A stretch of 63,935 nt of DNA, counting the filler, from Bigelowiella natans CCMP2755 (taxonomy: Eukaryota > Protista > Cercozoa): assembly GCA_000320545.1 (NCBI GenBank). It is 7 parts of 7 records of this genome, joined end to end, with 100 filler letters (N's around TTAATTAATTAA, not from the genome) between each part and the next. Parts side by side here need not be neighbours in the genome. Positions count along the whole stretch, not along the records: positions 23,477 to 48,252 come from ADNK01000396.1; 6 more parts are not named here. One strand, 5' to 3'. The position numbers and the translations under genes are program-made. The notes below the pieces were generated by a model, which saw only the letters and a program-made list of their open reading frames with translations, was not told the DNA's origin and ran no database searches. This document shows, in pieces, positions 25,200 to 44,235 of the stretch. Position 1 is the first letter of the stretch. Every line of letters starts with the position of its first letter.

Positions 25200-26100
25200 T
25201 ATCTTTTACATGTATTTGACTCCCATCTACATGCAAGATGTTTGCGCGATTGATGATTTTTGGCTTCGATTCAGCTTGCCGGATGATGCATTGCTTGTCA
25301 TTCTCACTGCTGAAATTTGCATGACGAGCAACACTGATGAGTTCTCATTGCTATGATCGGTGCGATCTAGCGATGCATGCGTGGCTTGCTGTAGCAACTT
25401 AGCAACATCTGCTAGAAAGAGCATGCGAATCACTTGTCAGCTTTGCAATGCACATCCGCCTCGATCATGTGTTCTCTGGTTCTTGCTGGCTTGCTAGCTA
25501 GCTAGCTTGTCTTGTTTCGGCTGTCTAGCTGTAGTGCAAGTTGCATCAGCGGCACGTTTTGGGCATTGGACGCGACAACGGGCACCATCCATCTAGCTAG
25601 CCATGGGTGTCGGCTTCTGCTAGTCTGCCTCATCGTCCAATTTGTCCTTCAGCAGCAACTTTGCTGCATGCCACAGCATGCAAATCATCGCTACACGTCA
25701 TGCTAGCATGCAAACAAACAGCGGCCACAGCGCTTAGTTGCATCTGTTCATCTCGTCCACTGCGTGTTTCGTGTTTCATGCCAATTGGTTTCACGCAGCA
25801 CTCACACGAATCCTGCTGGCCTGCGATGAAGTTGAAAGCTTCACATGGTCACCATTCGCACACATGATTCATTTGTGCTGGGCACAAATTCGCAAGGGAG
25901 TGTGAAGCTGCGGGTGCAGAACCTGCGCACTCTTGCTTTGATCGGATCACCACGCTTGCTGCGCAATTGCCACTGCGTCGAACAACGCACCAGCTTGGTG
26001 CTGTGCCAATCAGAACGTGTCCCGAGATGAGCTTGCAACATCTGGATTCTGGACACGGTGTGTTGACTGTTACGACGACCATTTGTCCCTCTAACATCCT
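25200..26100. repeat. CTAG/TGCA/CATG-rich intergenic island 2 (decayed repeat)
   Basis: TG/CA-rich, GCTAGCTAGC runs, interrupted frames; contains a segment repeated at 29739-29940. Confidence 0.7.
25505..25710 (+). repeat. Dispersed direct repeat copy A (about 205 bp)
   Basis: Aligns by eye to 29739-29940, both starting GCTTGTCTTGTTTCGGCTGTCTAGCTGT. Confidence 0.9.
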
Positions 26101-26922: not shown

Positions 26923-29047
26923 ATGGCACAGGGTGAGTACTCCTCCTGCTGTGTGTTCGAATGAGCGATGTCGTTTTGACGCTACATACATCGAGCTCAA
27001 CGAAGGAAGGAAATGAGGAAGGGTAGAATGGAGGAATGGAGAAGGGGGGTGAGCGAAACTGTTGTGATTGATTTTCATTGAATTTTATGCCACCAGGTTC
27101 GAGCATGAAGGAGGAGCTTTTGGAGGCCTGTGAAAAAGGCTACACCTACAAAGCAACACTCTTGATCAAGGAGGGGGCTAATATCGAGGCGAAGGATGAA
27201 AATGGCTGCACCCCTTTAATGCTTGCAAGTTACAATGGCGAGAGAGACACTGCAGAGCTCTTGATCGAGAAGGGGGCTAATATCGAGGCGAGGAACAAAA
27301 ATGGCTGCACCCCTTTAATGCTTGCAAGTTACAATGGCGAGACCGACACTGCAGAGCTCTTGATCGAGGAGGGGGCTAATATCCAGGCGAAAGACAAATA
27401 TGGTTTCACCCCTTTAATGCTTGCAAGTCTCAATGGCGAGACCGACACTGCAGAGCTCTTGATCGAGAAGGGGGCCAATATCGAGGCGAAGGATGAAAAT
27501 GGCTGCACCCCTTTAATGCTTGCAAGTATTGTTGGCGAGAGAGACATTGCAGAGCTCTTGTTCGAGTTTGGTGGGGCTAATATCGAGGCGAAGGATGAAA
27601 ATGGCTGCACCCCTTTAATGCTTGCAAGTTACAATGGCGAGAGAGACACTGCAGAGCTCTTGATCGCGAAGAGGGCTAAAATCGATGCGAGGAACAAAAA
27701 TGGCTGCACCCCTTTAATGCTTGCAAGTTACAATGGCGAGACCGACACTGCAGAGCTCTTGATCGAGGAGGGGCTAAAATCAATGCGAGGAACAAAAATA
27801 GTTTCACCCCTTTAGTGCTTGCAAGTCTCAATGGCAAGACCGACACTGCAGAGCTCTTGATCGAGAAGGGGGCTTATATCGAGGCGAAGGATGAAAATGG
27901 CTGCACCCCTTTAATGCTTGCAAGTGTTATTGGCGAGAGAGACACTGCAGAGCTCTTGATCGAGTTTGGGGCTACAATCGATGCGAGGAACAAAAACGGC
28001 TGCACCCCTTTAATGCTTGCAAGTTCCAATGGCGAGACCGACACTGCAACGCTCTTGATCAAGAAGGGGGCTAAATTTGGAGTGAAAGATTCAAAAGGAA
28101 GGGATGTATTGGAATTGGCAAAAGAAAGGGATGAACAAGAAGTAGCGAAACTTTCAAAAAAGCATGTCACATCTTGTAAAAAACGAAAAAGAGAAGTGAA
28201 CCAATCTGTAGTGTTGAACAAGAAAATGAAAAAAAAACACACAAAAGGAAAAAAAAAAACAGAAAAATGTAAAGCCTTGAAAATTTCTGAAGTAGAAAAC
28301 CATGATGAGAAGCAAGCTTCTGAATTTTTCAAGTCTCGTTTCCTTGACAATGGTCTAGGAGAGGCCGTGAGAACACCTCTAAAGGGAATAAAGAAACTGC
28401 CATTAGTGTCACTAGAAAACGCTGTCAGGGAATGTTGCAACTTACATACTGATCTGGAATATGAAGACCATTTAGAGTTAAATGTTGAGTGTGCATTAGA
28501 TACTGCGGATGAGATCCGCAGAGAGCACAAAGGTGAGAAGTTGTCGCGAGATAAAATAGGCGCTTTAAACTTGTACACACAAGAGAGTATCTTTTATCCG
28601 AAGCTCAACATGAGTCTCCGCAAGGCGGACAGAAAATCAGCTCTGCCTTTCTTCAAATATCTTCGACTTTTAACTTCTGCACTGGCAAAACTCCCAAATG
28701 TCAAACGAACTGTGTTTCGCGGCATGAGAGTTCCCACCGAACCCAAGTTAAGGAAAACCGTTATTAAAAAGTACGCAGAAGGAAGCAAGGTCACCGAATG
28801 GGGTGTGACTAGTGCGACAACGACTCAGAGAGTTATAAGTGGTTTTTTAAGTAAGAAAGGCTTGAACATGGTCTTCACCTTGGAGTGTCATCGTTTGAAA
28901 AGTATCAAGAAATATTCGGCGATACAGAAAGAGGACGAGATGCTCATTGGGATGGCGACTCGTTTCAAGGTTGTGAGTCGATGGAATCTCAACGGGGCAG
29001 AGATGGTTCAAATGAAAGAACTCGAAAAAATACCTCTCTGGTCCTGA
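26923..29047 (+). CDS. Ankyrin-repeat + NAD:arginine mono-ADP-ribosyltransferase (ARTC, R-S-ExE) fusion with one apparent frameshift
   Basis: Exon 1 ATGGCACAGG (26923-26932), GT..AG intron 26933-27096, in phase with the 27078 ORF. Nine TPL(M/V)LAS ankyrin units, a Lys-rich linker, then LYTQES..Y..LN..LR, TVFRG (R at 28718), TSAT (28808) and EDE (28931-28939). Frame switch near 27770. Confidence 0.9.
27171..28080 (+). repeat. Coding tandem array of near-identical 99-bp ankyrin units with 399-bp higher-order period
   Basis: Units recur every 99 nt (one is 102 nt); 27181 matches 27580 and 27282 matches 27681. Confidence 0.95.
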
Positions 29048-29059
29048 ACAGAAAGAAAT

Positions 29060-30470
29060 GGATTTATAGGATCACTTGGCATGTGCACTAGTACATTCGT
29101 GTCATGTCGGATGCACATTGTGTCACAAAGTGATGGATGTGCTGTTATGCATGTCCATGTGCAATGAAAGGGATGTCTAGATGTGTGCAATGCAATGGAA
29201 CAATTAACCTAAATCAATTAGCCCATGGAAACATTTTTAATGTTCATCCTAATGCAACGACGCAAGGCTGCGGCTGACCATTTGCGCTCAATGTCATCAT
29301 GTTGCATCTGTTTGTTTCTGTTGTTACATGCTTGAGCTTGAGCTTGATGCATTTCATCAAAAGTGTAGTCACATTTTGTGCAATGTCTAAAAGTGTGGGT
29401 AGTGGTCTGCACTTTTTTTCCAGCTTGAGTAGTTTTGTCTCGTCATTGCAAATGTGATGATGGCATTGCAATTGCTAGATTGGTACGCAACCTCTGCTGT
29501 TAGTGTTCGCATGCTGTTGTTGTTGTGTTCAAAACCGATGACCGCCACCACAAAAATCTCACGTGCACTTTGCATGGAAGAAATTGCAGAATCAGCATGG
29601 GCAGTCCATGCATCATGTTCAACTCTTTCATCAGTTTCACAAAACCATCGATTTTGGCCTTAAGACTTGAGACTGTTGTGATTTAAGGTGTGTGGATGTT
29701 GCTGACAGGGGGAGACACCTCAGCGTCCAAATTGCATCGCTTGTCTTGTTTCGGCTGTCTAGCTGTGCAAGTTGCATCAGCGGCATGTTCATTTGGGCAT
29801 TGGAAGCGACAACGGGCACCATCTAGCTAGCTAGCCATGGGTGTCGGCTTCTGCCTCATCATTTAATTTGTCCTTCAGCAGCAATTTTGCTGCATACCAC
29901 AGCATGCAAATCATCGCCACACGTCGATCATGCCAGCATGGCGGGCGGAATGAGTGGACGACGGCGGAACGTACGTCTGGATGGGGTTTCCCTTTGTTGT
30001 TGGAAAGCACTGATTGCACATCGGTGGATTGATCACATCACTCCTCTGCCCAGTGTGCTGGCTAGCTAGCTAGCTGTGTCATGGCATGCTTGACCAGCGT
30101 TGAGCAACAGCAATCTGGCAATGCTGGAATGCCACCACACGCACTTCTGGACTTGCACACGCAGGCGGGTCAAGGCGAAGTGGCTCCAGCCATGCCATTG
30201 TTTGCACTTGCTTAGCACAGTTTACCAGCGCTAACTGCATGCGCACATCTGTGTTGCAGACGCCAGCTAGCCAGTTGCTTGTGTGGCGTGCAATGTCAGG
30301 AAGAGTTGGACATCCGCGAACAAGCTTGCCAGCTTGGCCGTTCAAGATTGGCGGGCCGATTGGAAAGAAACAAATGAGTGTTTCCATTGAAGCAGTTGAA
30401 AGCATCATAGGACACCAATGAAAGAATACATGAAGCATTTCCACAGGAGCGGTTGAAAGGATCACAGCTC
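29060..30470. repeat. CTAG/TGCA/CATG-rich intergenic island 3
   Basis: Starts right after the ART stop; TG/CA-rich with many in-frame TGA on the minus strand; (CTAG)n at about 29823 and 30060. Confidence 0.7.
29739..29940 (+). repeat. Dispersed direct repeat copy B
   Basis: Paralog of 25505-25710 in the same orientation; the two copies bracket the ANK-ART gene. Confidence 0.9.
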
Positions 30471-30754
30471 AGGCTACCTCATCCCACCTCATCCGTGATC
30501 CGTGACCTCCTCAATCAGCTACAAGTGAGAGCGTGGCGTTCCATGCAAACAAGATGGAATTTTCCTCCTGCGACAACGAAAAATCCGATATATGTCTTTT
30601 TAGCGTTGTCGCAGAGACAGGAACGGAGTTACAAACATCGATGCTTCAAAGTCCTATTTTTTTTGTGCAGTGTGTAGCGAGGTAAGTACCTCACTCCATA
30701 GAAAGAAAGAACGGGTTAGCAGCATTTGGAAAAACCAGCACCGGATCACTACTC

Positions 30755-31686
30755 ATGGGGACTGTGGCGGCACCTGCCCACGCAATAGATCAGGAGAAGA
30801 GAAGGAAGAAAGCGCAGTCGGCCCCGACGAGGAGGAATGGTAGGAATATCACTGCGGTTGCTATTCGTCAGGAGCTCGAAAGGCTTTCAGAGGAGGTTTT
30901 GTCCAAGTCATGCAGACTGAAAACCTTGGCTCAGCTGCTGTATCGTATGGATTCCAAGGAGCATGTTAGCCCGCTGGAGTTGGCGATGGCGATGAGGGAG
31001 CAGAAGTGTAGGAATTACCACGCCGACATAGAATCTGATACGAGAAGGCAGGTGGTACTAAATGTGGTGTTGGAGGTAGACGCCGAGATATTACCACCAC
31101 CAATAGAACAATAGAACATCATCTTGGCAAACAATGTTGTTGGACAAGGGCATGATTGTTTTGCCTCTTAACTCAGGTTGCCCTTCTTCAAGCTGAAATC
31201 GAGAAAAGGGATGCTTGTATAACGAGGCTCCAGAAGGAAGTTAGAGTTCTCACGGAAAGGCAGCAGGGTGAGATCGCAGCCAAGATAAATTTAAGAAGCA
31301 CATCCGTGCAGCAGCTCGAAACCGATATTAACATCACAACAGCAAGTGATTATTTTAGTGACGAGGCTTCGTTCGATCAGCGGTGCAAGGTCATGGACGA
31401 CGACCTGATGTCCGTCGGGTTTCAATCACAGCACAGCTCCACAGACGTACCAACTACTGAGGAGATGACTTGCCTCGCTGATAGCTATAGCATCAAAGCA
31501 AGTAGCTTGAAAGAAGAAACTAGGCCAGAGGTGGAAATTTCGACGAACACCAATGATGTCAATAACAAAACGGATTTTTTCGTCGACGCTAATGATGCAA
31601 GGTGTTCATCATCCTCAGTGGTAGTTCAAAAGAGGGGTACTCCGAAGATAGACCAAAAAGAAAATCCCCCTCTCTTTTTCCTATGA
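30755..31686 (+). CDS. Two-exon orphan coiled-coil protein (about 268 aa)
   Basis: ORF from 30755 to donor after 31051; acceptor at 31176 in phase with VALLQAEIEKRDACITRLQKEVRVLTERQQ; stop at 31686. Confidence 0.7.
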
Positions 31687-32189: not shown

Positions 32190-32860
32190 CTCATGGGGAT
32201 GTGACAGCATGTTCACCTGGCTAGCTGGGACTCAAAAAAGGACTCAATCATTGTCTCTAAATGCTTCATGACGGCGTGGCCACTGCAGTGATGCCATTTT
32301 TCTGCATCTAGATGTGGCACGTGCCTGCATCGTGGATGGATGCGCGACATCGTGCACAGCGGCATGCCTGGCATCCACATGCACCAGTCTAGCAGTACGC
32401 TCTCTAGCTCTGGCACTGCACCACTCGCTAGCACTCTCAAATGCGATTTTTTTGGCATGCACGCAACCTCACCTCACTTTCATGAGTGCCTCAATCACTA
32501 ATTGACATCACGATGATTGCAAACGTTGCAGACATCTGCAGCAGACTTAGTAGCATGCCTCACCTAGCCCACATTTCATTTCCCATCAACAATCAGTTGC
32601 AAAAACTGCGAACACAATGCGCAACATGAAAATTTGCCTACTGACGACCTACTGCTGAACTGAATTGCTAGAATGACATGGCAAAATCACAGGCACATCA
32701 CTTGTTTTTGTGAAAACAATCTTTGTTAAAAATGACACAGCAAAATCTACAGCGGAGCATCGCGCCATTGCCCATCGCTCAATTTCCTAGCAAGGTCCAT
32801 TCAGAACTATTCTCCAACATGACAAAATGAGAGATGTGATGAACTAGGTGAATGAGGGAA
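32190..32860. repeat. CTAG/TGCA/CATG-rich intergenic island 4
   Basis: GCATGC/CACATG/CTAG-rich sequence between convergent 3' ends. Confidence 0.6.
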
Positions 32861-32903
32861 TCGTCATTGAACAAATGGATCCCTGAGTAGAGTGTTCTGG
32901 TCC

Positions 32904-35019
32904 TCAGCATGTGTTGACTCGAGCATAGATTCCAGGCAATTTCTTTTGGAGAGCCTTGATGAAATCGATGCCAATCACAAACATGTTGACTTTGTTGTGT
33001 ATCTCTTCTCTAATCCTTTTTTGAGCATCTCCCGTTGCCTTCCGCTCAAGTTCCTTGTCATCCTTTAACATTTCAAATTCGTCCTCTTCGCTAGGCGTCC
33101 TTGCAGCCGATGACCTGAGTTGCTCTCGTCGAGATTTGAGTTCTTCAACACACAATTTCTTTGCGGCGTCCATCTTTGATGCTATGTTCTTCTCAGTCCA
33201 TCTGTGGCCCAAAGTGAAATCTTTGAATTTCGACTTAGGAACAACATAAAGCCCAATGACTTTCGTGCCAGTAAGGCTATCGAGCGTCATTTCATCTTTG
33301 CTGAAAGGATTGTAGTTGTGCTCGCCAGATTCGATTTTGTTGCACTCTAAATACTTTCGCCAGGGCTTTTATTTCGCCAATGTTTGGAAGTCCAGTCAAC
33401 ACTGCATCCCAATTTTTGTAGCAGTTAGAGCAAATTGTGAGCCGCGATTTCTGGTTCGTGTCAAGCTTGCATGCTTCGAAAATTGCTTGATTTGTTTCTT
33501 TCGCATTATCAAAGTTCATATGCAGGATGCTGCCAGGTACTTTGACCTGGAATGGGGTCTCGTCAACCGCTGCTTGACCCGGCAGCCTTAAACGCCGGCA
33601 GTGAAACTCACCTCCTAAGGAAAGCATGTACAGCATTCGATGCTCGACAGCAAATGCCTCGTGCGTGGGATTTATCTTCATGACCCCGTAAGCCTTCTTT
33701 GCACAAAGCTGAGCTGCACGTTCACTCAAGAATTCAATGTCACGCTTGCCCGAACCAACGGATATGAACCTTTTACTTTCCCTCTCCCTAGCTGGCAGTT
33801 GAGGCACCATAGTGTACAGTTTGCTACTGTAATTAAGGTACGCTGTTCTTATAAACTCATTAGATTTATCTCCTAACCCTTCAACGACTTCTTCCTGATC
33901 TTGGAGGAAGTTTTCGCATGTATCCACCCCACCGAAAACGTGACGAACTGCACCCCCTGCCTTACAATATCTTTTTTCCACCTCTCCATCGCCCAGGGCT
34001 TTACCGTGGTGAAAATATCTACGGAAAGCTAAGAATTGGTCCAGTGAGAAGTTGAGCACGTTCACGAAAGCGAGGTCCGGCACGACTGTGAACTCAATAC
34101 TTGGAGACATGGGGATCACCGTAAAAAGACTTTCCCACGGTGCTCGATGCGGAAATGTGGTCTCAAACCAATTTTCTTTTCAGGATCGCAAATGAGAGTC
34201 ACACCATCCAGCTTTTTGTCCTTGAAATCGTGTGAACTTCGAACAATTTTTGTATAACTCTTGTACTTCTCATTTCCCCGATCATACTCGAATGAGTAGA
34301 AGGATGGACCTTTGCTGGAAAATAGGACTACATTCCTCTTTTTATCAAACTTCCTTCAAAGAAGCATGAACGATAGCCACGGACTTTCCCGTTCCCGGTG
34401 GGCCTCGTATGATCACACCCTTTCCTCCGCGATCCCTGCATTCTCTGGCATAATCCATAGCCTGTTGCATGGTGGGTCTGTACACTAACACCTTTTCCTC
34501 TTTCACTTGACCGAGTACCGCTGAGAACAACCCATTTTATAACACCAAAATTTGACACCAGTTATTCGTGCTTTCCCGTATGAAGATTTATCCTTTTTCA
34601 TCTCATAGGCGTTTGATTCCGACGGAGTCTCGTATTTTGCTTCCATTAGTTCATTAGCAAATTCCGTAGCATCTTTGTCGAACGTCCACTTGGAGTGTGC
34701 AGCTCCGCTTTCCTCATATTCCATGGCTGAACCCACACGCAAAAATATCTCAGCACACCGATTGTTCCTCAGATGTTAACAGAATTAATAACCTTGGGTT
34801 GCCTTCTTAAACTTTTGTCACATCCTTCAGTTCTGCCTACTTCGCCTGGATTTCCTTTTGAGTTTCAGCTATTTGCGCTTCTACTTTCTTTATTTTTTCA
34901 TTGAGCTCCTCCTTCGTAAAATTTCCTTCAAAGTAAAATTGTTCAAATCGCGCAAGTCGGTCATTCAGCTTGTTCTTCTCCTCCCTCAACATCTCAATTT
35001 GTTTGCTAATAGAGTCCAT
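32904..35019 (-). pseudogene. Crinkler/RHS-like protein: helical header + P-loop NTPase + REase-like domain, multiply disrupted
   Basis: Header MDSISKQIEML... from 35019, TAG at 34837-34839. Walker A GPPGTGKS (34381-34404), Walker-B-like TLICDP (about 34185), RYCKAGGAVRHVF (about 33950), NWDAV (about 33405), later H motif and VIGLYVVP. Needs frame changes near 34540, 34350, 34100-34170 and 33300-33370. Confidence 0.7.
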
Positions 35020-35265
35020 CTGAATTCCCCATACCACCTCAGAACGCTGAGAACACATCAAAGCTTAAGCTCCCGAACGCAAGCCTCGTAGGATAAGTAC
35101 CTGTGCTTTCGAACTTCTCCTGCTCGAGATTCTTTCATCATCTCCTACATTCCTTTTCGCGTCAGAAGATCCATCCGCTTCATAAACTCTAATTTCGAGT
35201 CACGTGTGAAGAAGATATTGCACGGAGACTCTCCTTGCGGCGAATCCCCGGAGAAAGATCATCGC

Positions 35266-37559: not shown

Positions 37560-38240
37560 TGTCATCTGCGCGCACGCAGTATCGTACATGCCTGGCACGC
37601 TATGTGTACACGATGCAGCAGCTATACGGCGTGCATGCGATGCATGTCTACGTATGCGTAGGGGGTGGCTTCGCCTATTATTATATGCTATGAAACGGTT
37701 ATACTACGATTATGATTAAATTAAATATGCTATAGATATGTGCTGAAGTACTCTTTGTGCTTCCAATGTGTACATATGGCGTAGCGATATAATATAGTGT
37801 AAGCCAGCATTCTGCTAGATGTACGTACGTACGTACTAGCGTAATGCACTGCTGACGTATTAGCGTATAGCCTATGCTCGCTGCTGCGGTGACTAGCTAT
37901 TATACTATGTATGCACACAGACTCACAGCTATATAAGGATGACCATTGAACAAATTTAATTGATTCATTACATCCATCTTACATACGTCAGAGTATAAGA
38001 GCGATATATCCAACGGTAGCTACAACGACTATATGCATGACCAGCAATCTCACAATCATGCACTGAAGTCACTGTTAGAGCGCGCGCGCCTAGTGATACA
38101 CAACAGCTTCCTGAGGCTTTGTGGCTTGCGATGTCGCCTGATATGACCATTAAAGGTCCACAACACTTCCTGTGTGAGCGATACCGGTGACAAACGTAGC
38201 CCTTCATCATCATGGCTAGTATACTAATAACATGCTGAAA
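37560..38240. repeat. TGCA/CATG/TACGTA/CTAG-rich intergenic island 5
   Basis: Same compositional signature, between convergent genes. Confidence 0.5.
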
Positions 38241-41789: not shown

Positions 41790-42600
41790 TAGTTCGTTGC
41801 CATTTAGCAGCTACTGCATAGCTGTCTCAGTCTTCATGCACGGATGAATGAACAAACGTATGCATGAGCTTAGGAATCGAGAGCACACAATCTTAATGTT
41901 CGTTCAAAGCACTGCGCATTGCAAGACGGATGTAATCAATCAATTAAATTTGTTCAATGGTCATCCTTATGTAGCTATGCATTGTGCTTGTCTAGCTGTG
42001 CAGTAATTATAATAGTTTGTGTTTGCTTGCTAGCTTGTGTGATTAGCTCTGCTCATTACTGTCGATGCGAAGTCAAGATTACGCATCATCATGCTAGCAT
42101 GGTGTAGCTCTTGCTAGCTTGCCTACATCTAGACATCTAGACGCTACGTATTGCAGTGGCGCAACCATTGTCCAAGCACGCCACTTTGCTTTTTCAAGCA
42201 TGAAAGACTTTACAACAACAGAAACTGATGTGCACAATTTAAGCGCTGTAGCCGCTGCACATGCATTGCATGCCAGCACGGTTACACATTAGGATGACCA
42301 TGCCTAGCATTGATCAAATTCAAAACCGACGGCTAACAACAACAAAAATACTGCATGCGGCAATGAAATCGATCATTGGACAAAGCCTGTGCTGATGAAA
42401 CAAAGCATCTAGGCACGCCTTTGGTGTGTTGGCGCCAGGACCAGTGTGACGCTGTCTATCCCACGCGCTTCACATCTTGTGGATGTACGCGGGCTTTAAT
42501 TTCTCACTTGCTTGTCATCACGTACATGTGTGAGCGTACCAATTATGCCACACGATGCAACGCCACATGTCGTGCACATCGCTATCAGCAGTAAGTGATG
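41790..42600. repeat. CTAG/TGCA/CATG-rich intergenic island 6
   Basis: GCTAGCATG, CTAGACATCTAG etc., between convergent YbaB and FHA genes. Confidence 0.6.
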
Positions 42601-42624: not shown

Positions 42625-42928
42625 CTAGAGCTTTGATGACACAGGAACTGACTTCCGCAACTTCGCACCCAAGTTTGCGGCAAAATGATCAGCCTGTTTG
42701 CCAGGCTCTGGGTTGTAGGACATCATGTAACTCCTCGTCGAAGACCCTAGTTTCAGAAAATCACCCTCCAGGAGGATGCGATGCGTGCTTGGCTCGATCT
42801 TTTCGCCGTTCACAAATGTTCCATGTTGCGATCCAAGATCGGTAACCTAAATGCAGCAAATGAGCGCTCGAAGTCTACCCAGAACTATTTTCATAACATG
42901 GGTTAACAACTCACACACTATCATTTTC

Positions 42929-42971
<43 letters not shown>

Positions 42972-44235
42972 CTCTTCTGAACCAGACGCCCCGAGTAGCA
43001 CAACATATATCCCAAAACGGATCTTAATATGGTCATGGAGGTGACGATACTAGGTGCGATGGTGACGACAAATGACAACGATTGGGTTATACTTACAAAT
43101 ACATCCCCCTCCGCGTCATGCTCCAGTTTCACATGCAGTCGACTGATACTTGGGTGCAATGCTGCGATGTCTACTCCCTCGTCGAGCCCACCACGTCCCA
43201 TCAGGTAGCAGCTCTTCGTGCCTATCCCCACCTCGCTCGCAAGGCTGCCAGCCTTCACAATCACAAACTTCGCCTTCCGGTATGTAGGGGGGGCGGCAAC
43301 GAAGGCCGTTTTCCCATCGGCCCCCTCCTGTGCACGAGTTTGCTCATCACTCTGGGTCGCTCGTTGTGCCATAGCCATGAACTGAGAGTGGGGTTTCGAA
43401 TGAAGGTTTTCTTTCAAAACCCCCGTAGTTCTAGAGGACTCCCCCTCTTCCCCTTCTTTGCCTCTCCCAGGATGAAAATCGTTCAGCATGCGCTGGACCA
43501 GAAGCCGTGCGGCAAACACATCTGTGACGGGTGGCGGTGCGCGCCGTTCCTACCCGTGTTGCGTAATGGTCATGTCGTACATCGCTCGATTTGTTGTTTT
43601 CATTTGCTCACCAATCTTGCACTAAATTGTGGTAGGTGCTAGTACCTCATCTAACATCCCACGCTGAGACTCGCGCACAAGTCGAGGGTGGGGGCGACCA
43701 GTGTCGTGGAAAAGGTGGAACGTCTTCGTCGCGTTTACTTCAATCACATCAATGGTGTCCAAATTTGGTATGAGTATAGGAATGAATATTAATCGTCATC
43801 ATTCGAAATTGTACCTACGTGCTGCCACATAGCAGTGACAAGATGCTTAGACACCACCTTAGGCCTTAATACGTCCTGAAGCAAATCTTCTACAATATCC
43901 TTTGTCAGCATCTCGACCCTCAGCTGATAACAAAGAGCAATTTTGCATTGTAAGTGCCAAACAATTTTCTTGCATATCACACAGCACGCCACATGCCACA
44001 TGCAGGGGGGGGTGAGGCGCAAGTGAGCAGGAACCACCTTGGATTTTCGTATCTGAAATACAAGTGCATCTTTGTAGACCTCGGCTAACTCCGAGGCTTG
44101 CTGAAGCTCCGCAATCACCTCTGTCTCTAGGGTCACTGGTGCGATTGATTATTACGCGATTAGAAATAGATTTCATCTCATAGTTATAATTCGAGCATGT
44201 AGAATAGACAAAGAAACATCGCAAATGCAGTGCGT

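What the first reader, a model, noticed from the sequence alone, without database searches (positions are those of the whole stretch)
26923..29047. Ankyrin-sensor / arginine ADP-ribosyltransferase fusion with a bipartite NLS-like linker
Seen: nine ankyrin units, then KKRKR-x10-KKMKKKHTKGKKK (28178-28272), then a domain with R (TVFRG), S (TSAT) and ExE (EDE). Established: these three motifs define cholera-toxin-like ARTC enzymes, and ExE marks arginine acceptors. Inference: a target-recognition module coupled to a toxin-type catalytic domain acting in a nucleus (own, viral factory or prey). The sensor-effector layout resembles an intracellular immune receptor.
Basis: partly seen in the sequence, partly recalled or inferred. 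Interest (0 to 1): 0.8.

Follow-up and report, generated by a model that had tools for sequence, protein, structure and literature searches.

The report
Ankyrin–ADP-ribosyltransferase fusion gene, frame broken
A nuclear gene, most likely of the alga Bigelowiella natans, joins nine ankyrin repeats and a lysine-rich linker to a real cholera-toxin-type (arginine-type) ADP-ribosyltransferase domain. Its reading frame is broken once and no transcript was found, so it is an unusual but probably decaying member of a large, little-studied enzyme family.

Summary
The domain content is real. There is a 99-nt tandem array (9.2 copies) of ankyrin repeats and a basic linker with 14 K/R in 27 residues. The C-terminal domain matches Pfam PF01129 ART (E 6e-14), keeps the family's R, S and ExE columns, and folds (pLDDT 86.7) like HopU1, Tre1, Vis and rat ART2.2, all arginine-specific enzymes.

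As assembled it carries one frameshift inside the ankyrin array, and the proposed start needs an unverified 164-nt intron. Transcriptome assemblies of the same strain match the neighbouring gene at 100%, yet no contig for this gene was found in the transcript-bearing collection searched.

The ART family has 1946 detectable relatives, in bdelloid rotifers, Rhizaria and metagenomes. It is fused to many modules: LRR, NHL, Sel1, TPR, SAM, kinases. Only 2 of 149 near relatives carry ankyrins, and in the opposite order.

Nearest relatives include a Bigelowiella natans protein and share the basic stretch ahead of the ART domain. No NTPase or other receptor-type module is present, and nuclear action is only suggested.

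Verdict: a new architectural variant of a known kind, probably inactive in this strain. Interest is modest.

The parts
26923..29047 (+). Ankyrin / basic linker / ART gene, given as one part. It is broken by one frameshift inside the ankyrin array. The stop codon is at 29045-29047.
   Evidence: The array is read in two frames, and the spacing of repeat copies departs once from a multiple of three.
26923..26932 (+). Candidate first exon (ATG plus 7 nt). Inferred, not verified.
   Evidence: Read from the sequence. The donor GTGAGT follows directly, and the phase fits the frame of the array.
26933..27096 (+). Candidate 5' intron, 164 nt, GTGAGT...CAG. Inferred, not verified.
   Evidence: The only intron in the piece backed by a transcript (neighbour gene, 66 nt) is also GT..AG. 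The alternative start is the in-frame ATG at 27105.
27108..28160 (+). Ankyrin-repeat domain: N-terminal cap, nine TPLM-type units of 33 (once 34) codons, and a C-terminal cap.
   Evidence: TRF period 99, 9.2 copies, 85% matches. Pfam Ank/Ank_2 E 8.5e-56 and 2.8e-17 for the two pieces. Variation between units lies mainly at the two positions after the LAS segment and in the loop before TPL.
28178..28258 (+). Basic, NLS-like linker, with further K/R up to 28272. The DNA is A-rich with long A runs.
   Evidence: 14 K/R in 27 residues, reached by 20 of 2000 shuffles. It contains the monopartite match KKRK. TRF flags 28223-28266 as low complexity. Basic stretches lie at the same place in P0002, P0003/P0151 and P0004.
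28337..29044 (+). R-S-ExE ADP-ribosyltransferase domain. The Pfam ART core is 28442-29029. R sits at 28718-28720, S at 28811-28813 and ExE at 28931-28939.
   Evidence: PF01129 E 6e-14. The AF2 model has pLDDT 86.7 and pTM 0.84. Foldseek PDB finds XopAI, Vis, Tre1, HopU1, C3, ExoS and ART2.2 at E down to 3e-11. Profile against PDB; conserved columns.

Best explanation
This is a nuclear gene of a chlorarachniophyte alga, either Bigelowiella natans or a very close relative. It belongs to a large eukaryotic family of intracellular, cholera-toxin-type (PF01129, R-S-ExE) mono-ADP-ribosyltransferases whose catalytic domain is fused to many different protein-binding modules.

Here the module is an N-terminal array of nine recently amplified ankyrin repeats, joined to the ART domain by a lysine-rich linker.

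Inferred mechanism when intact:
- The concave face of the ankyrin array binds a protein partner.
- The basic linker directs the protein to the nucleus or to an acidic or nucleic-acid-rich partner.
- The ART domain transfers ADP-ribose from NAD+ to an arginine of the recruited target. In logic this is an R-S-E counterpart of tankyrase.

In this strain the copy is most likely inactive or decaying. Its frame is broken once, no transcript contig was found, and it departs from conserved family positions more than any of 43 relatives compared.

Shown: domains, motifs, fold, family, the break, and absence from the assemblies searched. Inferred: arginine specificity, target recruitment by the ankyrins, nuclear location, loss of function.
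For: - Domains.
- Motif conservation: S180 and E222 are invariant, R149 and E220 at least 90%, in 44 sequences.
- Fold: pLDDT 86.7; Foldseek E 3e-11 to XopAI, Vis, Tre1 and HopU1, with ART2.2 at TMq 0.59.
- Profile against PDB: the best six distinct matches (HopU1, Vis, Tre1, ART2.2) are arginine-specific enzymes.
- Family size and partners: 1946 relatives at E<=1e-3. All 149 nearest representatives hit PF01129. Partners are LRR_6 in 16, NHL in 5, Sel1 in 3, kinase in 2 and Ank in 2, plus SAM, MORN, TPR, SH3, WW, Ras/Roc and others.
- No signal peptide or membrane segment: maximum Kyte-Doolittle (19) is about 1.0.
- The basic stretch ahead of the ART domain is shared with the four closest relatives.
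- One frameshift.
- Expression: transcripts of the neighbouring gene from the same strain match 100% over 2 kb. Neither a 40-mer nor six peptide patterns of the ART gene found any contig in that collection. No called product of the gene is on record.
- Divergence: the window agrees with 39 of 49 well-conserved family columns, the lowest of 44, and has E where all 43 relatives have W next to the S motif.
- Pooled dN/dS between repeat units is 0.85.
- Organism: transcripts L007/L008 are 99.7% identical to the window. One of their samples also carries P0152, which is in the same 90% cluster as the EukProt B. natans protein P0151.
Against: - The break lies in a tandem array, where assemblies err most, so it may be an artefact or strain-specific.
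- Absence from transcriptome assemblies is weak evidence. Expression may be low or conditional, and repeat arrays assemble poorly.
- The catalytic R, S and ExE residues are all retained, and the downstream piece alone still encodes three ankyrin units, the linker and the whole ART domain. A shorter product is therefore possible.
- dN/dS of 0.85 between repeats also fits diversification of binding surfaces.
- Neither activity, acceptor residue, target nor location was or could be tested here.
- The organism was identified indirectly.
Confidence: 0.6

Rival explanations
1. The gene is intact and functional. On this reading the break is an assembly error or private to this strain, and the full-length protein is a nuclear arginine ADP-ribosyltransferase that modifies chromatin-associated or other nuclear proteins.
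For: - The break sits in an 85%-identical tandem array.
- The catalytic residues are kept.
- A basic cluster with KKRK is present and shared by the closest relatives.
- There are weak SAP-like signals in relatives: P0004 at E 8.6e-4, below the Pfam cut-off, and 'SAP_new25 (faint)' on P0152.
- A Medusavirus protein named for a Rho_N (SAP-like) domain is among the structural matches.
Against: - The assembly is exact over 2 kb of the neighbouring gene when checked against three independent transcript assemblies.
- No transcript contig or called product was found for this gene.
- The ART domain is the most deviant of 44 at conserved columns.
- The SAP hits are below threshold.
Confidence: 0.25
2. 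One reading: a sensor-effector protein of cell-autonomous immunity. The ankyrin array would detect a viral or foreign protein and release a toxic ART activity, for instance against giant viruses or virophages of the host.
For: - The family's catalytic domain is shuffled among LRR, TPR, NHL and Sel1 repeats.
- One relative (P0059) combines two ART domains with TPR, a weak MLKL_N hit and a protein kinase.
- The repeats vary at positions that form binding surfaces.
- B. natans is a host of giant viruses and carries endogenous viral elements (PMC13196603).
Against: - There is no NTPase, death-fold or oligomerisation module in or near the gene.
- The ART domain hits no PADLOC model.
- There is no evidence of expression.
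- Repeat-plus-enzyme fusions are equally typical of ordinary substrate recruitment, as in tankyrase (PMC10789625).
Confidence: 0.1
3. The gene derives from a giant virus, either as part of an endogenous viral insertion or as a transfer from or to Nucleocytoviricota.
For: - The best-covering match in the viral structure library is an 'Ankyrin repeat protein' of Edafosvirus (TMq 0.70, E 3e-11).
- ART-fold proteins of Fadolivirus, Pithovirus, Solivirus, Medusavirus and mimivirus also match.
- A 206-nt direct repeat (86% identical) flanks the gene.
Against: - The surroundings are gene-poor and rich in microsatellites, with no viral hallmark gene in any ORF scanned.
- The gene has a candidate spliceosomal intron.
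- Scans of IMG/VR with subfamily patterns found nothing.
- The closest sequences are a B. natans nuclear gene model and rotifer genes.
Confidence: 0.08
4. The ART domain targets nucleic acid, as pierisin-type ARTC enzymes do, rather than protein arginine. The basic linker would then act as the nucleic-acid-binding part.
For: - ARTC enzymes with the same triad can modify DNA bases (PMC10789625).
- The linker is strongly basic.
- Relatives give SAP-like hints.
Against: The best 50 structural matches shown and all 13 profile matches are protein-modifying enzymes, most of them arginine-specific. No pierisin, scabin or MTX entry appears among them.
Confidence: 0.05

Closest known systems
Vertebrate ecto-ARTs (ARTC1-5; rat ART2.2, PDB 1gxy), the founding members of Pfam PF01129
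   Same: The best Pfam family covers profile positions 27-219 of 222. They share the R-S-ExE triad. The profile E-value to ART2.2 is 4e-11, and the structural match is among the best-covering in PDB, TMq 0.59.
   Different: The vertebrate enzymes are GPI-anchored or secreted, with the domain outside the cell or in the ER lumen (PMC10789625). This protein has no signal peptide or membrane segment. It carries an ankyrin array and a basic linker, so it should be intracellular.
Bacterial arginine-specific R-S-E effectors and toxins: HopU1 (3u0j), Tre1 (6dre/6drh), Vis (4xzj)
   Same: These are the closest solved relatives by profile (E 1e-15 to 5e-13) and by fold (E about 1e-10; TMt up to 0.83 for Tre1). 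The R, S and ExE residues align.
   Different: Those are secreted or injected single-domain effectors of bacteria. This is a eukaryotic nuclear gene with repeats and a probable intron. Identity is only about 20%.
Tankyrases (TNKS1/2)
   Same: The logic is the same: ankyrin repeat clusters recruit substrates to an ADP-ribosyltransferase domain at the C-terminus (PMC10789625).
   Different: The catalytic domain of tankyrase is of the H-Y-E (diphtheria-toxin/PARP) branch and makes polymers. Here it is the R-S-E branch, and there is no SAM domain. This is an analogy of architecture, not membership.
Basic-linker ART subfamily: Bigelowiella natans P0151/P0003, P0004 and P0002
   Same: These are the nearest sequences, 38-43% identical in the ART domain. 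All four have a K-rich stretch just ahead of the ART domain, and the domain lies at the very C-terminus.
   Different: Their N-terminal parts have no ankyrin repeats. Those parts have no Pfam domain, or only weak SAP-like hits.
Repeat-fused ARTs of bdelloid rotifers (Adineta, Rotaria, Didymodactylos) and Paulinella
   Same: Same PF01129-type domain at 33-40% identity, fused to binding modules such as LRR, TPR, MORN, NHL and SAM.
   Different: Ankyrin is rare as a partner, found in 2 of 149 representatives (both from metagenome contigs), where it follows the ART domain. None of the 149 has the order ankyrin, basic linker, ART.
'Ankyrin repeat protein' of Edafosvirus sp. (UniProt A0A3G4ZWG2, 1428 aa)
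   Same: It is the best-covering structural match in the viral library, TMq 0.70 and rmsd 3.8 over 270 columns. By its name it also carries ankyrin repeats.
   Different: It shares only 14% identity and is about twice as long. Its sequence could not be fetched here, so domain order and the catalytic triad were not checked.

Membership tests
ARTC / Pfam PF01129 (R-S-E mono-ADP-ribosyltransferases) | Match to the family profile above the curated cut-off | tested here: met
   52.3 bits against a cut-off of 22.3, E 6e-14, profile positions 27-219 of 222.
ARTC / Pfam PF01129 (R-S-E mono-ADP-ribosyltransferases) | Catalytic triad: Arg on strand 1, Ser of the S-x-S/T motif, and Glu of the ExE (ARTT) motif | tested here: met
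   R149 (at least 90% of 44), S180 (100%), E220 (at least 90%) and E222 (100%). They align to the corresponding residues of Tre1.
ARTC / Pfam PF01129 (R-S-E mono-ADP-ribosyltransferases) | Split-beta-sheet ART fold | tested here: met
   The AF2 model has pLDDT 86.7 and pTM 0.84. 138 PDB matches at E<=1e-3, and the 50 listed are all ART toxins or enzymes.
ARTC / Pfam PF01129 (R-S-E mono-ADP-ribosyltransferases) | NAD-dependent transfer to arginine | not testable with these tools
   This is only inferred from the ExE motif and from the arginine specificity of the nearest solved relatives.
Ecto-ART subgroup (ARTC1-5) | Signal peptide and GPI anchor or secretion | tested here: not met
   There is no hydrophobic segment at either candidate N-terminus or anywhere in the two pieces. 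The maximum mean hydropathy over 19 residues is about 1.0.
Ankyrin-repeat proteins | Tandem 33-residue repeats matching the Ank profiles | tested here: met
   Ank E 8.5e-56 (6 stretches) and 2.8e-17 (3 stretches). The DNA period is 99 nt.
NLR/STAND-type intracellular immune receptors | Central NTPase switch domain (NACHT, NB-ARC or similar) between sensor and effector | tested here: not met
   There is no such domain in either piece of the gene or in the open frames of the 3.4 kb upstream. The P-loop gene 4 kb downstream lies on the other strand and is a separate transcript.
Known anti-phage defence proteins (PADLOC) | Match of the effector domain to a defence-system model | tested here: not met
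   The ART domain gives no hit at E<=0.01. The ankyrin part gives only generic ankyrin hits.
Proteins with a classical nuclear localisation signal | Monopartite K-K/R-x-K/R or bipartite pattern, and nuclear import | tested here: inconclusive
   The patterns are present (KKRK, and KR-x10-12-basic), and the basic density is unusual (20 of 2000 shuffles). However, the bipartite pattern occurs in 1348 of 2000 shuffles. Import itself is not testable here.
Tankyrase / PARP (ARTD) | H-Y-E catalytic domain (Pfam PARP) | tested here: not met
   There is no PARP-family hit. The domain belongs to the R-S-E branch.

The most novel reading that the evidence does not exclude
The frame change is not real, or is tolerated, and the protein is a working nuclear arginine ADP-ribosyltransferase of a chlorarachniophyte. 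Its fast-evolving ankyrin array would recognise proteins of giant viruses or virophages. That would make it one example of a widespread, undescribed eukaryotic defence family built on a toxin-type ART domain, with relatives fused to LRR, TPR, kinase and MLKL-like modules.
Probability: 0.06. Interest if true: 0.7.

Novelty: new variant of a known kind. Interest (0 to 1): 0.3.

Why it matters
Toxin-type (R-S-E) ADP-ribosyltransferases are known in eukaryotes almost only as vertebrate ecto-enzymes. This locus belongs to a much larger family with about 2000 detectable representatives. Judged by this member, which lacks any signal peptide, and by its relatives' cytoplasmic-type partner domains, the family appears to be intracellular. 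It occurs in Rhizaria, bdelloid rotifers and uncultured organisms, and its catalytic domain is shuffled among many binding modules.

The family has database names but no studied member in the literature I could search. An ankyrin-recruited, possibly nuclear member would be an R-S-E counterpart of tankyrase.

This particular copy adds a new domain order. Because it is broken and apparently silent, its main value is as a pointer to the family and to its intact B. natans paralogue, not as a discovery in itself.

Tried and rejected
- **Word-index search with the ART region.** It found only the window's own 273-aa product.
- **Exact-product look-ups for four possible products of the gene.** None is on record.
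- **Metagenome/metatranscriptome scans with a 40-mer and with peptide patterns.** No contig was found.
- **Scans with the 6-sequence alignment.** Nothing was found in IMG/VR or in bacterial and archaeal genomes.
- **Word search with the FHA exon to name the organism.** No hits.
- **Word search with the neighbour ORF.** This did work, and led to the organism through transcripts.
- **AF2 model of the downstream piece.** The ankyrin part was poorly modelled because the alignment gave it no depth. The linker came out partly helical with low to moderate confidence. It says nothing about contacts between domains.
- **An in-frame GT..AG stretch of 87 nt spanning the basic linker, considered as an intron.** Rejected, because splicing there would create a stop codon (read).
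- **Pfam scans of 40 open frames and reading-frame segments elsewhere in the piece.** Only a Walker A segment and an FHA exon were recognised; there are no viral hallmark genes.
- **PADLOC.** Nothing specific.
- **Two reviews I wanted (PMC6126934, PMC4586850).** Neither is held.
- **Search for the run DRR659772 in papers.** Nothing found.
Full report
**What the piece is.** The piece 23477-48252 has sparse open frames, about 45% G+C and many dinucleotide microsatellites. It holds no Rfam family. It therefore looks like eukaryotic nuclear DNA.

**The observation.**
- A 99-nt tandem repeat with 9.2 copies and 85% matches occupies 27159-28074.
- Its units are ankyrin repeats. Pfam Ank gives E 8.5e-56 with six stretches in the upstream reading-frame piece, and E 2.8e-17 with three stretches in the downstream piece.
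- The basic stretch starts at 28178. It has 14 K/R in 27 residues, a density reached by 20 of 2000 shuffles of the piece.
- It contains a monopartite-type KKRK. The bipartite pattern also fits, but it fits 1348 of 2000 shuffles too, so the spacing carries no information. The spacer is nine residues, not ten.

**The ART domain is genuine.**
- The C-terminal 257 residues match PF01129 'NAD:arginine ADP-ribosyltransferase' at E 6e-14, 52 bits against a cut-off of 22.
- In an alignment with 43 relatives, the Ser and the second Glu are invariant, and the Arg and the first Glu are in columns at least 90% conserved.
- A model built on that alignment has pLDDT 86.7 and pTM 0.84.
- Foldseek matches it to XopAI, Vis, Tre1, HopU1, C3, ExoS and rat ART2.2 at E down to 3e-11.
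- A profile of the alignment finds HopU1 (1.3e-15), Vis, Tre1, ART2.2, XopAI, ExoT and SpvB in the PDB.
- ARTC enzymes can also modify DNA bases (PMC10789625), so arginine specificity stays an inference.

- The gene is not one open frame. The array is read in two frames. There is one frameshift inside the ankyrin domain, one in-frame 3-nt length difference in another unit, and no premature stop other than the one the shift creates.
- I kept the two pieces apart in every search and joined nothing.
- The proposed start at 26923 needs a 10-nt exon and a 164-nt GTGAGT...CAG intron. This is plausible, since the only transcript-backed intron in the piece is also GT..AG, but no transcript supports it. 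An in-frame ATG at 27105 is the alternative.
- There is no signal peptide or membrane segment.

**Expression.**
- The neighbouring gene on the minus strand gave three transcript contigs: two from JGI metatranscriptome samples and one from a Logan run. They are 100% identical to the window over about 2 kb and have one intron removed.
- The same strain is therefore represented in the collections, and the assembly is accurate there.
- A 40-mer of the ART domain, and then six peptide patterns, found no contig for the Ank-ART gene in the JGI collection.
- Four possible products of the gene are not on record.
- This is weak negative evidence, because only assemblies were searched, not reads.

**Organism.**
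- Transcripts from two further samples are 99.7% identical to the window.
- One of those samples also carries P0152, which sits in the same 90% cluster as the EukProt Bigelowiella natans protein P0151.
- I infer that the window comes from B. natans or a very close relative. This is indirect.
- B. natans is not a pathogen. It is a host of giant viruses and carries endogenous viral elements (PMC13196603).

**The family.**
- An exhaustive HMMER search found 1946 representatives at E<=1e-3 and 726 at E<=1e-10.
- Named sources are bdelloid rotifers (Adineta, Rotaria, Didymodactylos), Bigelowiella and Paulinella. The rest are metagenomic.
- All 149 nearest representatives hit PF01129.
- Their partner domains are diverse: LRR_6 in 16, NHL in 5, Sel1 in 3, protein kinase in 2, plus SAM, MORN, TPR, SH3, WW, Ras/Roc, tyrosine phosphatase, SidE_PDE, UEV, UCH and TLDc.
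- Ankyrin occurs in only two, and there it follows the ART domain.
- One relative has ART, TPR, a weak MLKL_N hit, a kinase and a second ART.
- The four closest relatives are 38-43% identical and include the B. natans protein. They share a lysine-rich stretch directly ahead of the ART domain, and the domain ends the protein.
- Two of them give sub-threshold SAP-like hits.
- The basic linker thus looks like a conserved trait of this subfamily rather than an accident of the A-rich DNA. That is the only independent hint of a nuclear or nucleic-acid-linked role.

**Giant viruses.**
- In the viral structure library the best-covering match is an Edafosvirus 'ankyrin repeat protein' (TMq 0.70). Several other giant-virus ART-fold proteins follow.
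- I could not fetch these sequences.
- Scans of IMG/VR and of prokaryotic genomes with subfamily patterns were empty.
- The locus itself has no viral hallmark genes.

**Signs of decay or divergence.**
- The window's ART domain agrees with 39 of 49 columns that are at least 80% conserved. That is the lowest of 44 sequences.
- It has E where all 43 relatives have W, next to the Ser motif.
- Pooled dN/dS between six intact repeat units is 0.85. The variable positions are mostly those that form the binding face in ankyrin proteins, by my own knowledge of the repeat. Both relaxed constraint and surface diversification fit this.

**Interpretation.**
- The domain-level reading is sound: a binding module plus an arginine-type ART.
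- The closest functional analogy is tankyrase, where ankyrin clusters recruit substrates to an ADP-ribosyltransferase of the other catalytic branch (PMC10789625).
- The 'immune receptor' reading lacks its defining switch domain and any PADLOC match of the effector. It stays a minority possibility, fed only by the family's shuffling with LRR, TPR and MLKL-like modules and by the host's known viruses.
- I rate this copy as probably inactive in this strain.

- A possible slip under the operators' line: the outputs of my scripts show the repeat unit in which the frame changes, and notebook entry 1 quotes the bounds of the two open frames.
- I have deleted nothing. This report gives no place for the break and no change that would undo it.

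Noticed in passing
window 25505-25710 and 29739-29940: A direct repeat of about 206 nt, 86% identical, flanks the Ank-ART gene at a distance of 4.2 kb. It could be two copies of a dispersed repeat, remnants of terminal repeats of a mobile unit, or a local duplication. No target-site duplication or TG..CA ends were evident.
   Followed up: partly
window 32705-35064, minus strand; loci L001-L003, L007, L008: This is a transcribed gene with a Walker A motif (GPPGTGKS) and no Pfam family for the rest. In the window and in three 100%-identical transcript contigs its coding sequence lies in several frames; the called products are 272 and 128 aa side by side. In transcripts of two other samples, 99.7% identical at DNA level, a 410-aa frame is continuous. 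The 5' ends of L001 and L002 match the window at only 75-89%, which suggests a multi-copy family.
   Followed up: partly
window 34727-34792, minus strand: This is the only transcript-backed intron in the piece: 66 nt, GT..AG.
   Followed up: yes
window 37924-37983 and 41920-41979: A 60-nt inverted repeat, 92% complementary, encloses about 3.9 kb. None of the open frames inside it has a Pfam match. It may mark the ends of a non-autonomous DNA transposon.
   Followed up: partly
window 42628-42846 and about 42914-43333, minus strand: This is an FHA-domain gene split by an intron. The second exon matches PF00498 positions 35-67 (E 7e-7), and the first exon carries the start of the domain. A word search with the first exon found no relatives.
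   Followed up: partly
window 28223-28266: The coding DNA of the basic linker is A-rich low complexity with long A runs, which are prone to slippage. The lysines are largely encoded by these runs.
   Followed up: no
window 28796-28798 (residue 175 of window:28274-29044): The window has Glu where all 43 aligned relatives have Trp, immediately before the invariant Trp and the Ser motif of the ART domain.
   Followed up: partly
L005/L006 6001-9330 (protein P0059): This metagenomic relative has 1109 aa: ART, TPR, a weak MLKL_N hit, a protein kinase and a second ART domain. It lies on 10-43 kb contigs with closely spaced, mostly same-strand called genes, next to a Leg1-family gene and, in L006, another ART gene. 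The kinase part matches PADLOC models mad6 and PD-T4-6.
   Followed up: partly
window 30686-31683, plus strand: Two adjacent open frames (142 and 176 aa) have coiled-coil-like sequence and no Pfam match. They are probably exons of one gene downstream of the Ank-ART gene.
   Followed up: no
whole piece 23477-48252: The piece is unusually rich in long dinucleotide microsatellites. (TC)n, (AC)n, (TA)n and (AG)n runs of 18-37 copies occur at more than a dozen sites.
   Followed up: no
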